Assembly: GCA_025594325.1 (NCBI GenBank)
Contig: JANHCV010000004.1
Location: forward strand, 2,294,001 to 2,358,000
Source of the DNA: Blastocladiella emersonii ATCC 22665
Lineage: Eukaryota > Fungi > Blastocladiomycota
Direction of reading: 5' to 3'
DNA: 64,000 nt
Part shown: one piece after another, positions 15,421 through 21,576 of the stretch
Layout: every line of letters begins with the position of its first letter
How positions within the stretch are numbered: the stretch's first letter is position 1
The notes under the pieces: generated by a model
The model's input: the letters and a program-made list of their open reading frames with translations, nothing else
Told to the model about the DNA's origin: nothing
The model's database searches: none
Translations under genes and position numbers: made by a program

Positions 15421-18400
15421 CTACGCGGGACTCGGCACCTTGCGCCGCACGAGGGCCTCGACGGTACACCACCACAGCGACGAGGCAGCGCGCTTCTCGA
15501 CGACGATCAGGAGCCGCTTCGCGAGCTCGGCGTACTCTGCGCGTGAGACGCGGGTAACGGGAATCCGCGCCGTGACCATGGCGTGCCACGCCGTGTGCAC
15601 GTCGTTGGAGACGACGAGGACCGACGCGAGCAGGGCCACGAGCACGGGGAACTTGAGCGCGGCGCCGTCGACCGCGTCGTCCTCGCCCGGCACCATGGCG
15701 TACAGCGCCGTGTACGCGCGGTCCATGATCTCCTGCGGCACGTTGCGCGCCTGCGCCAGCAGCTCCGCCAGGGAGTCGCCGAACGTCAGGTAGAACGCCG
15801 GGCCCGCACCCACTTCCGCCAGGACCTGCAGCAGGTACGGGTTCGGGAAGTCGTACTTGGTCGCGACGGCCGGCGCGTCGCCGCCACCATGCGCGTGTCC
15901 GTGGCCCGCCGCGGGCGCCGTCGAGACGCCGTGCAGCCGCAGCCGGTCAAACACGCACTGCATGAGGGCCGGGTCCTCGGTGAGGTCGAGCCGCATGGCG
16001 CGCGCGACCGCGGGGAGCGCCTGCGCGAGGTGCTCGAGCCGGAGGTGCGCCTTGGTGAGCGCGGTGCGCAGCGTGTTCTGCGCTGCGGGCAGCTTCGACG
16101 CCGCCGCGGACGCCGACCCGGACTTGGTCGGGCTCTCGAGCACCTGGTGCAGCGGGATCGGCGGGTACAGCGCGGCGTGCGTGAACTGGGCCGGGTCGAG
16201 GCCGAGCGCCGTGACCTGCGGCGCCAGCTCGTGCTCGGGCCGCCGCAGCGCAATCGCCGCCGCCAGGGTCTCGGTCGCCTCGCGCTTCTTGGTCAGCCGA
16301 TCGATTTCGCGGAAGAAGGTCGGAACCAGGGTGCCGAGCAGGCCCGCCGAGTGCGCCGGGTCGAGCGCGGGGAACCCGCTTGCGCCGCCGAACGACATGC
16401 GCTCGCCCGCGGTGCGCCGCGCGGCGGCGGCGGGCGCCGACCCGAACGCGACGAGCAGCTGGACCATGCCGTGCGCGAACCCCGCGTCCGGGTGCGCGCA
16501 CAGGACCAGCATGTCGCCGACGCTCTTGGGCGACGGGCTCAGGGGCACGCCGAGGGTCACGGGCGCCGCGGACACGAGCCGCTGGTACCAGTCGAGGAAC
16601 GCGGCCGCGACCGGTGGGTGCACCACGTGGAACAGCTTGTTGAGCAGTGCCTCCTTGACGGCGTCGCTCGTCAGCAGCAGCGCGGCGCCGCGCGCTACGG
16701 GGTCCACGGCCGGCGAGGATGGCGCGGTCGGCGCTGCCGGGTCCCCGCGCGTCCACGCGAGCCAGTCTTCGGCGAGGTACCACGCCGCGGGCTCGACGGT
16801 TGCCGCGGACGCCGCAGCCACGTGCGACGCACTGACCTTGTCGGCACCGCTCCGCCCGAACAGCCCGAGCGTCACGGGCGCCGCAGCCACGGCGGGGAAC
16901 TCGAGCGGCAGCCCCATGAGCGTATTGCACAGCTGGGTGACCTGGACCGCGTCAAAGTGGACGATCGTGAGCGCCGCGGCCGGCGCGCGCAGCGTGTCGC
17001 CAAACACGGAGAGGACCACGGCCATGAGCTCCGACGCGCGATACGGCGCCGACAGGACCGCGCTCAGGATCGTGTCGGCGGCGAGCTCCGAGGTCGGGAC
17101 CCCGGCGCGCATCGCGCGGAGCGCCATGGCGACCTGCGCCGCGGCAACGCGCGCCTGCAGCTGCGCGAGCGCGGGCGTCTGCGTCAGGTCAATCGCGAGC
17201 AGCGCCGCGACGACGCGCGGGTCCACGGGCTGGTGCGTCCACCGGTACGTCCACTCGTCGATGAGCGGCGAGACTGTCGCGGGCGGCAGCGCGGCGTCGG
17301 CGGCGTCAGCGGATGGAGCGGCGTTGGCGGCGACGGCCGAGAGTAGCGCCTGGCGGACCAGGTTGTTCGGGTCGCGCAGCTCGGCGACGAACTGCATCGA
17401 CAGCTCCCAGTTCTCGAGAAAGTGGCGGAACAGCACCGCGACGCGCTCGCGGTGGTCGGCCGCAGCCGGGTCTGGGCGCGAGCGCTTCTTGCTCCCCGGC
17501 TCCCCGGCTCCTGCTGCTGCGGCGGGGCACGAGAGAAGATCAAAGATCGGGATCAGGAAGTGGTGCAGCCACGTCTTGGACGACGACAGCGACACGGCGC
17601 CCTGCGCGGCGGGTCCCTCGGCGGTGCCCGCGAGCGCCAGCATCAGGCTGATCACGTCGCCCGACGTGTGGAGCGGCAGCAAGACCTCCTCGAACAGCGG
17701 GCGCGGCGGCGCCTGCGACACGGGCAGGGCAAAGTAGCGCGCGAGGACGGTCAGGATGCGCTTGTGCCCGGTCATGGCCGCGACGGTGAGCCGGCGGAAC
17801 AGGATGCGGACCGTCGGGACGAGCAGCGGCGGGTGCGACAGCCGCGGGCACGCCGAGAGCACCGTGATTACGTCCCCGGCGCGGGCCGGGACCGCCGTGG
17901 TCCACGCGACGAGCGCGTCGAAGAAGAGCGCGGCGAGCGACGGCGCGGCGCGCGAGAGCATCTGGTCGCGGAGCCGCCGCAGGACCGGGTGCCGCAGGAC
18001 GTGCCGGAACACGCACACGAGCGCGGCGGCGGTTTCGCCGCGGTACGCGTGGCCGAGGACCGGGTCGGCGAGGTCCGGGACGGGCCCGATCTCGGCATTC
18101 TCGTTGCGCCCGCCGCGCCGCTGCCGCTTCGCCTCGGGCTGACGCACCACCGCGTCGTCCATGTTCATGCGCTGCTGGACGGCCACGAGCTCGTCGGCGA
18201 ACAGGCTGCGCAGCCGCGAGTTGACCTGCGGGTTGACGACGTCGACGAGCCCGCGCAGCGGCCACACATCCGGGTCGGCGTACGCCAGGTGCGCGGCGAC
18301 GAGCTCGGCGAGCGTGCGGACCACGACCGCCGCGCCCGTGTGCTCGTGCACAATGTCCAGGTCGGTCGCTCGGTACCGCAGCATCGCCGACGGCGCGATC

Positions 18401-18861
18401 CGCGAGATGGGCGGGTCGGTGCCGCGGCTGAGCGCCCAGGTGACGCAGATCAGGTCGAACGCCTTGACCCCGTGCCGGAGGTCCCCCAGCGCGTTGCCGG
18501 CGACGCTGCGCATCACGGTGGCATCGGGCGCTGCCGCTGCCACAGGGGCGCGGCCGGCGGCGGGCAGCGGGTGCAGCGTCCGCCACATGTCGGCGAGCCA
18601 CGCGCGGAACCCGGCCTGGTACGTGTCGGTGTTGGGGGCCCCGGACCCGTTCAGGTACGTGCTGCGCAGCAGGCGCGCCTCGTTGGTGCCGTACTGCAGA
18701 AGCACCGGCGTCATGAGGTTGTCGAGCGGGCTCGCCCACTCGCCGACGTGGCTCTGCGTCAGCAGCGCGAAGGTCATCACCATGGAGTCGAGCGTTGGCT
18801 CGGCCGACGTTGCACTGGGTTCGGCCGGTGGCGGTTCATTCTTTGCATCGGGTTGGTTCAT
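15421..18861 (-). CDS. Large hypothetical alpha-helical protein (~1146 aa), probably nuclear
   Basis: Long uninterrupted ORF with typical codon usage. Likely start MNQPDAK at 18861. NLS-like motifs PEAKRQRR and SKKRSRP. No family recognised. Confidence 0.75.
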   Translation of the reverse strand: MNQPDAKNEPPPAEPSATSAEPTLDSMVMTFALLTQSHVGEWASPLDNLMTPVLLQYGTNEARLLRSTYLNGSGAPNTDTYQAGFRAWLADMWRTLHPLPAAGRAPVAAAAPDATVMRSVAGNALGDLRHGVKAFDLICVTWALSRGTDPPISRIAPSAMLRYRATDLDIVHEHTGAAVVVRTLAELVAAHLAYADPDVWPLRGLVDVVNPQVNSRLRSLFADELVAVQQRMNMDDAVVRQPEAKRQRRGGRNENAEIGPVPDLADPVLGHAYRGETAAALVCVFRHVLRHPVLRRLRDQMLSRAAPSLAALFFDALVAWTTAVPARAGDVITVLSACPRLSHPPLLVPTVRILFRRLTVAAMTGHKRILTVLARYFALPVSQAPPRPLFEEVLLPLHTSGDVISLMLALAGTAEGPAAQGAVSLSSSKTWLHHFLIPIFDLLSCPAAAAGAGEPGSKKRSRPDPAAADHRERVAVLFRHFLENWELSMQFVAELRDPNNLVRQALLSAVAANAAPSADAADAALPPATVSPLIDEWTYRWTHQPVDPRVVAALLAIDLTQTPALAQLQARVAAAQVAMALRAMRAGVPTSELAADTILSAVLSAPYRASELMAVVLSVFGDTLRAPAAALTIVHFDAVQVTQLCNTLMGLPLEFPAVAAAPVTLGLFGRSGADKVSASHVAAASAATVEPAAWYLAEDWLAWTRGDPAAPTAPSSPAVDPVARGAALLLTSDAVKEALLNKLFHVVHPPVAAAFLDWYQRLVSAAPVTLGVPLSPSPKSVGDMLVLCAHPDAGFAHGMVQLLVAFGSAPAAAARRTAGERMSFGGASGFPALDPAHSAGLLGTLVPTFFREIDRLTKKREATETLAAAIALRRPEHELAPQVTALGLDPAQFTHAALYPPIPLHQVLESPTKSGSASAAASKLPAAQNTLRTALTKAHLRLEHLAQALPAVARAMRLDLTEDPALMQCVFDRLRLHGVSTAPAAGHGHAHGGGDAPAVATKYDFPNPYLLQVLAEVGAGPAFYLTFGDSLAELLAQARNVPQEIMDRAYTALYAMVPGEDDAVDGAALKFPVLVALLASVLVVSNDVHTAWHAMVTARIPVTRVSRAEYAELAKRLLIVVEKRAASSLWWCTVEALVRRKVPSPA

Positions 18862-18980
18862 GGTTCGCGGTCGAGTGTGGGAGCGCGGTCGCTGATCAGG
18901 TCGGCGCGACCATCTGGTCTCCGCTTCCCCGCCTTTGTCAGTGCAAGTGTGACTATGTATCAATAGGAAAGGCTAACAAG

Positions 18981-20299
18981 CTAGTAGACGAGAGCAGCAA
19001 GGGGCTGGACCCACGGCTGCGCCATGGCGGCGACCTCGGGCAGCATCACGGCGAGCGGGCGGGCGGCGAGGGCGAGGTACGAGACGACCTCGATGATCTG
19101 GTTGGTTGCGCCGAGCGCGTCGCCGACGACGCCGCCGAGGATGTCGACAATGTAACGGCCGGCGTACATGGTGGCGACGGACGCGAGGACCCACACGAGC
19201 GCGAGGTGGTACACGGACGCGCGCAGGACGACCCAGGTGAAGACGAACGCCGACGCCGACCCGGCCAGCAGCCGCGCGCGCGACACGGAGAGCACAAAGT
19301 GCTTGCCGGGCGCCGACTCGGTCGGGTCCTCGAGGTACTTGTGCGCGAACAGCAGGTACACGCACGCCCACCGACCCATGACGTGCCCGACGACCAGCAC
19401 CAGCGGCGACCACGCCGCCGACTCGCCGATCAGGTGCGCCCAGCCCTGCGCTGCCGCGGCACCGGGCACCAGCAGCATGAGCAGGCCCGACAGCTTGGAC
19501 AGGACCACGAGCAGCAGGCCGATGCACCCGTACGTCCCGATGCGCGAGTCGCGCATGATCCGCAGGATCTCGCTGCGGCCCCAGCCGCCACCAAACGCTA
19601 CGAGGAATCAGGATGGTGTTAGTGTCGCGTCGTTGAAGCTTGGCCGTGGACGCGCACGGGTCTGTTGTGCCTCGCACTCCGCAGTTGGTGGTACATACCG
19701 TCAAAGCAGTCGGCCACGCCGTCCTCGTGGAACGCCCCCGTGAGCCACACCGTGGCAAGTGTCGAGAAGAGAACGCCGAGCGCGGGGTGCCAGATGAAGC
19801 TGGTGACGGCGAAGGTCGCGGCTCCAAACAGCCCGACGATGACGCCGATGAACGGGAAGTACACGGTGCTCTGCGAGATCCAGTACAGATTGTGGTCGAC
19901 CTACGAGGAGACGCGAACGCGGTGTCAGTTGAGGAAGCGAGGTCAACGGACCGCAACGTTGGGGACGACGCGGATCGCCGTGTGACGCCGCCGCAGCCCA
20001 TCGAGCAAGAGCAGAAGTGTGCGTACCCAGTGCGGGCACGGCAGCCGGGTGAAGAACATGAGGCCCGTGAGGAACGCCTGGTACTCGTTCATGAGGAACG
20101 ACTGCTTGGCGACCACGTCGGGGATGTCGCGCGGCAGGAACCGATTGAGGTCGCCACGGCCGCTCGCAGCCACAGCAGCGGGCTGGTACTCGGACTCGAT
20201 GGCGGCGGGCGCAACCTGAGGCACGTCGTTGACGGGCGACAGCTCCCGCGTCGCGGCGGCGGCGGCAGCGCGCTTGCTCGCCTTGGTCTTGCGCGCCAT
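18981..20299 (-). CDS. cobS: Cobalamin (5'-phosphate) synthase, adenosylcobinamide-GDP ribazoletransferase (3 exons, 363 aa)
   Basis: Exons 20027-20299, 19699-19900 and 18981-19597 (1092 nt, in frame) give the CobS motifs LMFFTRLP, YFPFIG, TGAFHEDGVADCFD, FGGGW...IMRDSRIGTYG and LGGVVGDALGATNQIIE. Introns are canonical GT-AG (19901-20026, 19598-19698). Confidence 0.93.
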
Positions 20300-20497: not shown

Positions 20498-21576
20498 TTA
20501 CATTCGAGAGTAGGTGCCGCGGACGAAAAAGTCGTCGCTCTTGCCCGGCTGCGTCGGGTCGCGGGGCTCGGTCTTGGTCTTGGCGTAGATGGACGCGATG
20601 GCCTCGGACTTGCGCGTGGACCCGGCCGCGGGCAGTGCGGGCATCGACACGTTGATGGTGGGCGCGGCGCGGTGCTGGCGTTTCGGAGCGGACTCGTCGG
20701 CTCCGTCGAGTGCTTCGTCGGCCTTGCGCTTGGACCGCTTCTCCTTGTCCTTGCCACCACTGCTGCTGCCCTTCTTCTTCGATTTGCTCTTTTTCTCGGC
20801 AGCCGCCGCGGCGGCGCGGGCGGCGAGGCGCTCCTTGAGCGCGGGCAGCTCGTTGGCGGTCGGGTTGAGCGGGATCACGTCGGCGACTGGGTCGTACGCG
20901 GTCGCGCACATGAGGCACTCGGCCGTCGCCGAGCTCGCGGCCGCGCCGTCGGTGCTGCTGGCCTTGTCCTCGGACGACGCCTTGGACCCGGCCTCGCGCA
21001 GCGCCTTCTCGGAGAGCACGTGCCCGCACGGCCACAGCGCGACGAACCGGGTGCGGCCGTTCATGGGGCGGCCCGAGATCGGGCACGCGAACATGGGCTG
21101 CGCCGACTCCATCATGCTGAGCTTGGCGCCCGCCGACGCGGCACTGCTGCCGTCCTTGTCGATGGGCTCGAGCTTGAGCGCCACCACGTCCTTGAGCGAG
21201 CGGATGTGCGCACACACGTGGGCAGCGTCGCCAAACGAGGACGCGTCGAGCAGGTAGTGCAGGACGGCCTCGCGGTTGTACAGCTTGCCGAGGCCGCACG
21301 TCACGACGGGCTCCTGCAGCGGTTCCTGTAATGGGACGAGCTCGCGTCAGTTGGGCTTGAAGCGGCGACGAGGGTCTAAACAATGGTACTTTGGACACGG
21401 CGCAGAAGAACCAGCACACGGTCGCGAGAATGGACGGATCCATGCGGGTCTCGCGGCCCTTGGTCTTGACCATCTCATCGCGGCGCGGGATGCTGCCTCC
21501 GTCGGCTCCCTGTGCGTTCGGAATCAGTCCATGGGTCGGTTGCATCAAGTCATTGCAGATTCATGAGACTCACCAT
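20498..21576 (-). CDS. RTF2: Replication termination factor 2 (Rtf2 RING-like; 3 exons, first exon is the ATG only)
   Basis: M|GADGGSIPRRDEMVK, CGLGKLYNREAVL, HIRSLKDVV, FACPISGRPMNG, CGHV...CLMC. ATG at 21574-21576 followed by a GTGAGT intron (21510-21573). Confidence 0.92.

What the first reader, a model, noticed from the sequence alone, without database searches (positions are those of the whole stretch)
18981..20299. Intron-containing cobalamin synthase (cobS) in a fungal genome: candidate eukaryotic cobamide remodelling/salvage system
Seen: a 363-aa spliced gene with all the CobS motifs, two canonical spliceosomal introns and fungal housekeeping neighbours (RTF2, DJP1, PAM16), so it is not a bacterial contaminant contig. 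It has a ~65-aa basic/Ala-rich N-terminal extension before the CobS domain. Established: CobS joins alpha-ribazole(-P) to adenosylcobinamide-GDP, the lower-ligand attachment step. Fungi do not make the corrin ring. Early-diverging fungi keep B12-dependent MetH and methylmalonyl-CoA mutase. Some algae (Chlamydomonas, Pavlova) use COBT/COBS/COBC to remodel pseudocobalamin. Inference: this fungus may convert scavenged cobinamide or pseudo-B12 into usable cobalamin with a bacteria-like, possibly horizontally acquired enzyme. I cannot check whether this is already reported for the lineage.
Basis: partly seen in the sequence, partly recalled or inferred. Interest (0 to 1): 0.85.

Follow-up and report, generated by a model that had tools for sequence, protein, structure and literature searches.

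The report
Fungal cobS gene for B12 assembly
The water fungus Blastocladiella emersonii carries an intact, intron-containing gene for CobS, the enzyme that attaches the lower part of vitamin B12; related swimming fungi and many algae and protists share this gene, so these fungi may finish or rebuild scavenged B12-like molecules, which no paper I could find reports.

Summary
On the minus strand, exons 20299-20027, 19900-19699 and 19597-18981 encode a 363-aa CobS (PF02654). It has two GT-AG introns, a ~69-aa N-terminal extension and both motifs that are essential in Salmonella CobS.

The window is Blastocladiella emersonii ATCC 22665. GenBank holds this gene only inside a 1483-aa "hypothetical protein" that merges cobS with the next gene, probably an annotation artefact.

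The gene is not a contaminant and not a recent bacterial transfer:
- Its GC3 equals that of its neighbours.
- Intron 1 sits at the same codon and phase in Catenaria and Allomyces.
- At least 13 zoosporic fungi have orthologues that form one clade (100/99).
- That clade is sister to a clade of oomycete, thraustochytrid, euglenid, algal, Paulinella and Sphaeroforma CobS; all eukaryotes together score 100/99.

Links to CobT: head-to-head with cobS in the chytrid Polychytrium, and fused to it in Sphaeroforma and several unnamed database proteins.

The function, lower-ligand attachment for cobamide salvage or remodelling as proposed for algae, is inferred. I found no RNA data and could not confirm B. 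emersonii's own cobT. No paper I could search mentions fungal CobS or CobT. Verdict: new member of a known kind, moderately interesting.

The parts
20027..20299 (-). cobS exon 1 (codons 1-91): start codon, N-terminal extension and the first CobS motif FFTRLPCP
   Evidence: gene model. The start MARK... matches the orthologue N-termini MARK/MARE/MPRK. NF001277 positions 2-23 match residues 70-91.
20093..20299 (-). Coding region of the ~69-aa N-terminal extension. Residues 1-45 are basic and Ala-rich. Residues 47-69 are the blastoclad-conserved stretch GRGDLNRFLPRDIPDVVAKQSFL.
   Evidence: In the AlphaFold2 model residues 1-55 have mean pLDDT below 50 (disordered), and confidence is high from about residue 61.
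19901..20026 (-). Intron 1, 126 nt, GT..AG, phase 0, between ...LPCPHW and VDHNLYW
   Evidence: The same position and phase are used in Catenaria anguillulae and Allomyces arbusculus. It contains in-frame stops.
19699..19900 (-). cobS exon 2 (codons 92-158 plus 1 nt)
   Evidence: PF02654 profile positions 13-70, E=3.8e-12.
19700..19729 (-). Loop-2 motif HxDxxxDxxD (HEDGVADCFD, residues 149-158)
   Evidence: The residues are invariant across 50 homologues. D82, D86 and D89 of this motif are essential in Salmonella CobS (PMC8092220).
19598..19698 (-). Intron 2, 101 nt, GT..AG, phase 1, with a CTAAC branch-point-like site. Its position is unique among the sampled orthologues.
   Evidence: Pfam profile positions 70 and 72 abut across it.
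18981..19597 (-). cobS exon 3 (codons 159-363 plus stop TAG at 18981-18983)
   Evidence: PF02654 profile positions 72-207, E=8.8e-22.
19110..19133 (-). Loop-6 motif GxxGDxxG (GVVGDALG, residues 314-321)
   Evidence: D229 of this motif is essential in Salmonella CobS (PMC8092220).
18815..19014 (-). 200-nt 'intron' (GT..AG) used by the GenBank model KAI9183661.1 to fuse cobS to the downstream gene. It removes the last 10 cobS codons, the stop, the 119-nt spacer and the first 16 codons of the next ORF. Probably an annotation artefact.
   Evidence: The orthologues are stand-alone genes of 337-346 aa.
15421..18861 (-). Downstream neighbour: 1146-aa ORF with no Pfam domain and only weak Atlas look-alikes of Integrator/Mediator-type helical scaffolds. 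Not part of cobS.
20498..21304 (-). Upstream neighbour: Rtf2 RING-finger gene (last exon or ORF), 198 nt from the cobS start
   Evidence: PF04641, E=1.1e-46.

Best explanation
This is the native nuclear cobS gene of Blastocladiella emersonii. It encodes a polytopic membrane enzyme of the adenosylcobinamide-GDP ribazoletransferase (cobamide 5'-phosphate synthase) family.

Shown here: an intact three-exon gene with host-like codon usage, both catalytic loop motifs present, and membership of a clade of zoosporic-fungal CobS that shares intron positions. That clade lies within one eukaryote-wide CobS clade whose nearest sampled bacterial relatives are Bacteroidota and Gemmatimonadaceae MAG proteins.

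Inferred: the enzyme joins alpha-ribazole-5'-phosphate, made by a CobT phosphoribosyltransferase from DMB, to a corrinoid. The corrinoid would be either activated cobinamide or, as reported for Vibrio cholerae CobS and proposed for algae, a complete but unsuitable cobamide such as pseudocobalamin. The fungus would thereby turn scavenged corrinoids into cobalamin for its B12-dependent enzymes.

By analogy with the bacterial topology, the active-site loops should face the cytosol. The first ~55 residues are a disordered basic tail of unknown role (targeting or regulation).

The gene was inherited vertically at least since the common ancestor of Blastocladiomycota and Chytridiomycota. It is not a recent bacterial transfer.
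For: Gene and family:
- Gene model and profile colinearity.
- PF02654 E=1.3e-42; NF001277 matched end to end, E=3e-57.
- HEDGVADCFD and GVVGDALG are intact. Their essentiality in Salmonella CobS comes from PMC8092220.
- Hydropathy gives at least five hydrophobic spans. The confident all-helical AF2 core has pLDDT 85 and pTM 0.84.

Native to the genome:
- GC3 is 0.926 for cobS against 0.926 and 0.935 for its neighbours.
- The first 353 aa are identical to a B. emersonii GenBank protein on a 2.5-Mb contig.
- The upstream neighbour is Rtf2.

Vertical inheritance:
- Orthologues occur in Allomyces, B. britannica, Catenaria, Paraphysoderma, Polychytrium, two Phlyctochytrium species, Quaeritorhiza, Cladochytrium, Obelidium, Podochytrium and Rhizoclosmatium.
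- In the IQ-TREE analysis the fungal clade scores 100/99, blastoclads 95/81, the other-eukaryote clade 99/92 and all eukaryotes 100/99.
- Intron 1 is shared with Catenaria and Allomyces. A second intron position (YFPLI|GV, phase 1) is shared by blastoclads and the chytrid Polychytrium.

Functional link to CobT:
- Head-to-head CobT-CobS pair in Polychytrium.
- CobT-CobS fusion in Sphaeroforma, and CobS-CobT or CobT-CobS fusions in five unnamed database proteins.

Precedent:
- Algal COBT/COBS/COBC correlate with pseudocobalamin remodelling (PMC4850488).
- A COBT knockout study in Chlamydomonas (bioRxiv 10.64898/2026.08.07.738727).
- V. cholerae CobS is involved in remodelling (cited in PMC7733943).
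- Blastocladiomycota have the whole set of B12-dependent enzyme families analysed by Orlowska et al. (PMC8085122).
Against: - There is no expression or splicing evidence for this gene: no RNA run was listed, and the reads laid were DNA only.
- Scores fall below NCBI's curated equivalog cut-offs (194 against 273 for NF001277; 90.7 against 110 for TIGR00317). Identity of function with bacterial CobS is therefore a family-level inference.
- B. emersonii's own cobT, metH and MCM are known to me only from unchecked first-stage notes. My CobT search did not list a B. emersonii protein among its best 120 hits.
- No note in the scan mentions cobU/cobP, cbiZ, cbiB or bluB, so the source of an activated corrinoid substrate and of DMB is unknown.
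- A COBS knockout phenotype could not be obtained in Chlamydomonas, so even in algae the role of COBS is unproven.
- GenBank models the gene as a fusion, which I could not exclude with RNA.
Confidence: 0.75

Rival explanations
1. The CobS-family protein has been repurposed in eukaryotes. It would be a membrane phosphotransferase acting on a substrate other than a corrinoid, or a corrinoid-handling protein without synthase activity.
For: Scores are below the NCBIfam equivalog cut-offs. A eukaryote-specific N-terminal extension is present. No cobU, cbiZ or cbiB was noted in the genome. No COBS knockout phenotype was obtained in Chlamydomonas.
Against: Both catalytic loop motifs and 13 invariant plus 24 nearly invariant alignment columns are kept across bacteria and eukaryotes. 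Physical linkage or fusion with CobT has arisen repeatedly in eukaryotes. The gene is found in lineages reported to have B12-dependent enzymes (PMC8085122).
Confidence: 0.12
2. The GenBank model is right. CobS would be the N-terminal domain of a 1483-aa protein, joined through a 200-nt intron (19014-18815) to the downstream helical protein.
For: The deposited model KAI9183661.1 uses a canonical GT..AG pair. The two ORFs lie on the same strand only 119 nt apart.
Against: All seven orthologous loci inspected carry stand-alone cobS genes with unrelated downstream neighbours. An in-frame stop ends a protein that runs only about 10 residues past the orthologues' ends after the shared RP. The downstream ORF has its own ATG and resembles nuclear scaffold proteins only weakly. 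Gene mergers by predictors are common in compact genomes (my general knowledge).
Confidence: 0.12
3. The gene was acquired recently from bacteria by Blastocladiella, or it is bacterial contamination of the assembly.
For: CobS is overwhelmingly a prokaryotic family: 12,346 representative hits, mostly of bacterial length. The closest named non-eukaryotic hits are Bacteroidota and Gemmatimonadaceae MAG proteins.
Against: The gene has two spliceosomal introns, one shared with Catenaria and Allomyces. Its GC3 is identical to its neighbours'. It lies on a 2.5-Mb fungal contig between eukaryotic genes. The fungal clade is monophyletic inside a eukaryotic clade, each with 100/99 support.
Confidence: 0.02
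4. The gene is a decaying, unexpressed relic of an ancestral pathway.
For: No RNA evidence was available. B. emersonii is noted to have the B12-independent MetE as well (unchecked note).
Against: The reading frame is open, the splice sites are canonical, all invariant residues are kept, and the branch length is similar to those of the orthologues (0.2).
Confidence: 0.05

Closest known systems
Bacterial/archaeal CobS (adenosylcobinamide-GDP ribazoletransferase, cobamide synthase; Salmonella enterica CobS; Pfam PF02654)
   Same: The match covers the whole profile. Both proteins are polytopic helical membrane proteins. The HxDxxxDxxD and GxxGDxxG loop motifs shown to be essential in Salmonella are present.
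   Different: Identity to the nearest bacterial proteins is about 37-44%. Scores are below the NCBIfam equivalog cut-offs. The fungal protein has a ~69-aa N-terminal extension and spliceosomal introns, is a solitary nuclear gene rather than part of a cob operon, and has no noted CobU partner.
Algal COBS of the COBT/COBS/COBC set linked to pseudocobalamin remodelling (Chlamydomonas reinhardtii, Pavlova lutheri; Helliwell et al. 2016, PMC4850488)
   Same: It belongs to the same eukaryote-wide CobS clade as a green-algal (Raphidocelis), a brown-algal, a euglenid and other protist COBS. N-terminal extensions are also present there. The proposed role, attaching a DMB-derived nucleotide to a scavenged corrinoid, is the same.
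   Different: The fungal sequences form their own clade, sister to all the other eukaryotes. The host is a heterotrophic zoosporic fungus. No remodelling phenotype has been tested. Chlamydomonas itself was not among the sequences I sampled.
Vibrio cholerae CobS-dependent cobamide remodelling (Ma et al. 2020, as cited in PMC7733943)
   Same: It offers a mechanism by which CobS (with CobT) could remodel a complete cobamide without CbiZ or CbiR. This would explain a genome with cobS and cobT but no noted cbiZ or cobU.
   Different: It is known only for a bacterial enzyme. No residue signature for this activity is known to me, so it cannot be tested by sequence.
CobT-CobS fusion of Sphaeroforma arctica (XP_014153767.1) and unnamed CobS-CobT fusions in the protein databases
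   Same: The CobS domains are homologous and fall in the same eukaryotic clade. They support a CobT-CobS functional unit.
   Different: B. emersonii CobS is not fused to CobT. An AU test rejects a fungi+Sphaeroforma clade (p=0.009).

Membership tests
CobS / cobamide synthase family (Pfam PF02654) | Significant full-length match to the family profile, above Pfam's gathering score | tested here: met
   146.8 bits against a cut-off of 23.2, profile positions 2-207 of 207. The exon pieces are colinear with the profile.
CobS / cobamide synthase family (Pfam PF02654) | Loop-2 motif HxDxxxDxxD | tested here: met
   HEDGVADCFD at residues 149-158. Motif definition from PMC8092220.
CobS / cobamide synthase family (Pfam PF02654) | Loop-6 motif GxxGDxxG | tested here: met
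   GVVGDALG at residues 314-321. Motif definition from PMC8092220.
CobS / cobamide synthase family (Pfam PF02654) | Polytopic integral membrane protein | tested here: met
   Kyte-Doolittle hydropathy gives at least five hydrophobic spans. The AF2 model is an all-helical bundle with pTM 0.84.
Bacterial CobS equivalogs (NCBIfam NF001277, TIGR00317) | Score above the curated equivalog cut-off | tested here: not met
   194.1 against 273 (NF001277) and 90.7 against 110 (TIGR00317), although aligned end to end. Allomyces and Sphaeroforma behave the same way.
CobS / cobamide synthase family (Pfam PF02654) | Catalyses AdoCbi-GDP + alpha-ribazole-5'-P -> AdoCbl-5'-P + GMP | not testable with these tools
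   Needs complementation or an enzyme assay.
Eukaryotic COBT/COBS(/COBC) remodelling set (algal type) | CobS groups with the other eukaryotic COBS rather than with a particular bacterial lineage | tested here: met
   The eukaryotic clade scores 100/99 and includes Raphidocelis, Discosporangium, Euglena, Hondaea, Aphanomyces, Paulinella and Sphaeroforma.
Eukaryotic COBT/COBS(/COBC) remodelling set (algal type) | A COBT (PF02277) gene in the same genome | tested here: inconclusive
   Two unchecked first-stage notes report an intron-containing cobT elsewhere in this genome. My CobT profile search listed Polychytrium CobT but no B. emersonii protein among its best 120 hits.
Eukaryotic COBT/COBS(/COBC) remodelling set (algal type) | B12-dependent enzymes (METH, MCM) in the same genome | not tested
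   Only unchecked notes and the statement that Blastocladiomycota have the whole set of the analysed B12-dependent enzyme families (PMC8085122).
Eukaryotic COBT/COBS(/COBC) remodelling set (algal type) | Growth or LC-MS evidence of pseudocobalamin + DMB -> cobalamin | not testable with these tools
   Needs an experiment.

The most novel reading that the evidence does not exclude
Zoosporic fungi (Blastocladiomycota and Chytridiomycota) inherited a working CobT/CobS lower-ligand pathway from their common ancestor. They use it to convert cobinamide or pseudocobalamin from their bacterial and cyanobacterial surroundings into true cobalamin. This would be the first cobamide salvage or remodelling capacity in Fungi. 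It would partly answer the open question of where B12-using fungi get usable cofactor. It would also mean that eukaryotic COBS as a whole descends from a single ancient bacterial acquisition.
Probability: 0.5. Interest if true: 0.65.

Novelty: new member of a known kind. Interest (0 to 1): 0.5.

Why it matters
Fungi were long regarded as B12-free. Since 2021, early-diverging fungi have been known to carry B12-dependent enzymes, and that paper states that the source of their cobalamin is still an open question (PMC8085122). A conserved, vertically inherited CobS, with CobT beside it in one chytrid, suggests these fungi do more than import finished B12. They may complete or re-tailor corrinoids, as proposed for some algae. 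That would matter for vitamin cycling in freshwater and soil food webs, where chytrids and blastoclads live among cyanobacteria and algae.

The idea is directly testable in a culturable model, B. emersonii: feed cobinamide or pseudocobalamin with DMB, or complement a bacterial cobS mutant.

On the practical side, the GenBank entry for this gene is a merged "hypothetical protein", which hides it from annotation-based surveys.

Tried and rejected
- RNA evidence. The RNA search then listed no run. A search of any kind gave three runs of the source sample, all genomic contigs that run through the introns with no joints. Splicing is therefore supported only by homology and shared intron positions.
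- B. emersonii CobT. I searched with a eukaryotic plus Polychytrium CobT profile. The best 120 hits were algal, oomycete, Polychytrium and bacterial proteins, with no B. emersonii entry.
- Solved structures. The sequence search and the Foldseek search of the AF2 model found nothing meaningful (best E=0.4, TM below 0.2). No CobS structure was available for comparison.
- Synteny. The cobS neighbours differ in every fungal locus inspected. Only Polychytrium has CobT adjacent.
- Opisthokont vertical descent. A fungi+Sphaeroforma clade is rejected (AU p=0.009). The group was named after I had seen the tree, so treat this with caution.
- Mitochondrial presequence reading of the N-terminus. The first 18 residues are basic with no acidic residue, but orthologues have Lys/Ser/Pro-rich tails and AF2 predicts disorder. 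No targeting predictor was available, so I make no localisation claim.
- Literature. Seven full-text searches and targeted reads found no paper that mentions CobS or CobT in fungi. This covers only the held library.
Full report
**Observation**

The region 18981-20299 carries a minus-strand gene. I enumerated all GT..AG boundary combinations within a few bases of the apparent junctions. Only one model gives an open frame:
- Exons 20299-20027, 19900-19699 and 19597-18981, encoding 363 aa.
- Intron 1 of 126 nt (phase 0) and intron 2 of 101 nt (phase 1).

Both introns contain in-frame stops and are less GC-rich than the exons. Intron 2 has a CTAAC branch-point-like site.

The three exon translations match the CobS profiles one after the other, without overlap or gap. 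Pfam PF02654 positions 13-70 fall in exon 2 and 72-207 in exon 3. NCBIfam NF001277 positions 2-23, 31-90 and 92-251 fall in exons 1, 2 and 3. So the splice junctions are supported by homology.

The spliced protein scores E=1.3e-42 on PF02654. It aligns end to end to NF001277 with E=3e-57. The upstream neighbour is an Rtf2 gene.

**Whose genome**

A profile search of 1.8 billion representative proteins returned a 1483-aa protein, KAI9183661.1, [quoted passage not shown], on a 2.5-Mb contig. Its first 353 residues are identical to my model. It then continues exactly with residue 17 onward of the ORF downstream of cobS.

So the window is B. emersonii. This agrees with the published 21-contig, 34.27-Mb assembly (PMC9730499) and with the scan's count of 21 pieces.

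The deposited model confirms introns 1 and 2. It adds a third, 200-nt GT..AG "intron" (19014-18815). This removes the last 10 codons, the stop, the 119-nt spacer and the first 16 codons of the next gene.

I think this merger is an artefact, for four reasons:
- Orthologues in Allomyces, Catenaria and B. britannica are stand-alone genes of 337-346 aa.
- Downstream neighbours differ in all seven fungal loci inspected.
- The downstream 1146-aa ORF has its own ATG and no Pfam domain.
- That ORF only weakly resembles Integrator/Mediator-type scaffolds, an odd partner for a membrane enzyme.

Without RNA I cannot exclude the fusion. I give it about 0.12.

**Is the protein a competent CobS?**

Work on Salmonella CobS defined two cytoplasmic-loop motifs. 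These are HxDxxxDxxD, with three essential aspartates, and GxxGDxxG, with an essential aspartate (PMC8092220).

Both are present: HEDGVADCFD at residues 149-158 and GVVGDALG at 314-321. They lie in columns that are invariant or nearly so across 50 fungal, protist and bacterial homologues.

Hydropathy shows at least five hydrophobic spans. An AlphaFold2 model built on that alignment is a confident helical bundle (pLDDT 85, pTM 0.84). Residues 1-55 are disordered.

No solved structure resembles the model, by sequence or by fold.

One caveat applies. Scores are below NCBI's strict equivalog cut-offs (194 against 273; 90.7 against 110). The same holds for Allomyces and for the CobS domain of Sphaeroforma. 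Family membership is firm, but identity of reaction is an inference.

**Origin**

The best hits to exon 3 are Allomyces arbusculus (63%), Catenaria anguillulae (61%), Blastocladiella britannica (57%) and Polychytrium aggregatum (47%). Bacterial proteins follow at 39% or less.

Further searches added these zoosporic fungi:
- Paraphysoderma
- two Phlyctochytrium species
- Quaeritorhiza
- Cladochytrium
- Obelidium
- Podochytrium
- Rhizoclosmatium

Several of these are already labelled CobS or "cobalamin-5-phosphate synthase domain" in NCBI.

Among the best 150 representatives, the longer proteins that could be named were all eukaryotic:
- Aphanomyces astaci
- Hondaea fermentalgiana
- Euglena gracilis
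- Paulinella micropora
- Discosporangium
- Sphaeroforma arctica

The green alga Raphidocelis came from the earlier word-based search.

I built an IQ-TREE (LG+C20+F+G4, PMSF) of 72 CobS domains. It gives:
- A fungal clade with support 100/99, holding 12 named fungi, Rhizoclosmatium and two unnamed sequences.
- Within it, a blastoclad subclade (95/81) and a clade of 9 sequences holding six of the seven named chytrids (99/83). Quaeritorhiza groups with the blastoclads (99/83).
- A clade of all the other eukaryotic sequences (99/92).
- The two joined at 100/99.
- Bacteroidota and Gemmatimonadaceae MAG proteins as the nearest bacterial rows.

A FastTree of all 150 domains agrees.

Intron positions tell the same story:
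- The window's intron 1 (…LPCPxW|VDHNLYW, phase 0) is at the same codon and phase in Catenaria and Allomyces.
- A second position (YFPL[IL]|GV, phase 1) is shared by Allomyces, B. britannica, Paraphysoderma and the chytrid Polychytrium, but has been lost in B. emersonii.
- The window's intron 2 is unique among the genes sampled.

GC3 of cobS (0.926) equals that of its neighbours (0.926 and 0.935).

Contamination and recent transfer are therefore excluded. The gene has been in fungal nuclei at least since the blastoclad-chytrid ancestor.

The eukaryotic tree does not simply follow the species tree. Fungi plus Sphaeroforma as one clade is rejected (AU p=0.009; the group was named after I had seen the tree). 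The deeper history could be one ancient acquisition with later eukaryote-to-eukaryote transfers, or something more complex. It remains open.

Two limits apply. Only the 150 representatives closest to a fungal profile were sampled, and most metagenomic rows in the "eukaryotic" clade are unnamed.

**Function**

The evidence for a cobamide role is contextual:
- In Polychytrium aggregatum a CobT gene (PF02277, annotated as nicotinate-nucleotide-DMB phosphoribosyltransferase) lies head to head with cobS, about 340 bp away.
- Sphaeroforma arctica encodes an intronless CobT-CobS fusion. Five other database proteins, four of them without an organism name, are CobT-CobS or CobS-CobT fusions. The Aphanomyces protein carries a CobT fragment before CobS.
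- A 2026 preprint reports that COBT is necessary for this in Chlamydomonas, but could not obtain a COBS mutant.
- In Vibrio cholerae, remodelling involves CobS without CbiZ (as cited in PMC7733943).
- Blastocladiomycota are reported to hold the whole set of the B12-dependent enzyme families analysed. The same paper calls the source of fungal cobalamin an open question (PMC8085122).
- First-stage notes on other windows of this genome list MetH plus MetE, two cobT observations, MCM, its epimerase, methionine synthase reductase, a class II RNR, an EutB-EutC fusion and CBA1-like proteins. I could not check any of these. None mentions cobU, cbiZ, cbiB or bluB.

My reading is that B. emersonii CobS attaches a CobT-made alpha-ribazole phosphate to a scavenged corrinoid. 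The absence of a noted CobU favours direct exchange on a complete cobamide over classical cobinamide salvage, but this is inference.

**N-terminal extension**

Residues 1-45 are basic and Ala-rich (6 K/R, 15 Ala) and are predicted to be disordered. Residues 47-69 (GRGDLNRFLPRDIPDVVAKQSFL) are conserved among the four core blastoclads and begin to pack on the core. Other eukaryotic CobS also have extensions, while the short, bacterial-length representatives start at about the FLTRLP motif. I make no localisation claim.

**Novelty**

Orlowska et al. 2021 do not mention CobS, CobT, ribazole or remodelling. Amses et al. 2022 and Merenyi et al. 2023 refer only to cobalamin-associated enzymes, and neither mentions CobS. 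No paper in the held library combines dimethylbenzimidazole with Chytridiomycota, or cobalamin synthase with Blastocladiomycota. None combines COBS or COBT with chytrid or blastoclad genera.

Helliwell et al. 2016 did note that the best non-algal hit to Chlamydomonas COBS was Sphaeroforma, and called for a broader phylogeny.

So the enzyme family and its presence in eukaryotes are known, and the fungal orthologues are partly annotated in databases. As far as I could search, their existence and implication have not been discussed. I class this as a new member of a known kind, with moderate interest (0.5). It offers a clear, cheap experimental test in a culturable fungus.

Noticed in passing
window 15421-20299 (-): GenBank protein KAI9183661.1 (1483 aa, 'hypothetical protein') merges cobS with the unrelated downstream 1146-aa gene through a predicted 200-nt intron (19014-18815). 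This hides the CobS gene from name-based surveys.
   Followed up: partly
L005:730-4180 (Polychytrium aggregatum JAHLKK010000005.1): CobT (PF02277, 363 aa, minus strand, multi-exon) and CobS (290 aa, plus strand) are divergently transcribed from a shared spacer of about 340 bp. This is the only fungal locus of seven with this pairing.
   Followed up: partly
P0236, P0183 (CobT-CobS); P0205, P0207, P0208, P0256 (CobS-CobT); P0161 (CobT fragment-CobS): CobS and CobT are fused in both domain orders. Examples are Sphaeroforma arctica (intronless, L006:3001-5247), Aphanomyces astaci and several unnamed metagenomic or Logan proteins, some on contigs of about 110 kb. All fall in the eukaryotic CobS clade.
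   Followed up: partly
window 15424-18861 (-): A 1146-aa Ala-rich ORF with no Pfam hit. Its Atlas feature look-alikes are Integrator subunits 1, 2 and 5 and Mediator 23 and 24 (scores about 0.9, few shared features), so these are only weak leads. A first-stage note reports an Integrator subunit 7-like gene just beyond the window's end.
   Followed up: partly
L001:6274-6347 (Allomyces arbusculus cobS intron 1): The intron at the position shared with B. emersonii and Catenaria starts with GC (GCACGT...CAG) in the deposited Allomyces model. This is either a GC-AG intron or a small model error.
   Followed up: no
L001:2299-3178: In Allomyces arbusculus a riboflavin-synthase-type Lum_binding gene lies about 3 kb upstream of cobS. 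This is probably coincidence, though DMB derives from flavin.
   Followed up: no
window 1-64000: GC content swings between 0.59 and 0.74 along the window (4-kb bins). The lower-GC stretches at 1-8 kb, 36-44 kb and 60-64 kb coincide with regions where first-stage notes describe a duplicated or rearranged OPT/7TM block.
   Followed up: no
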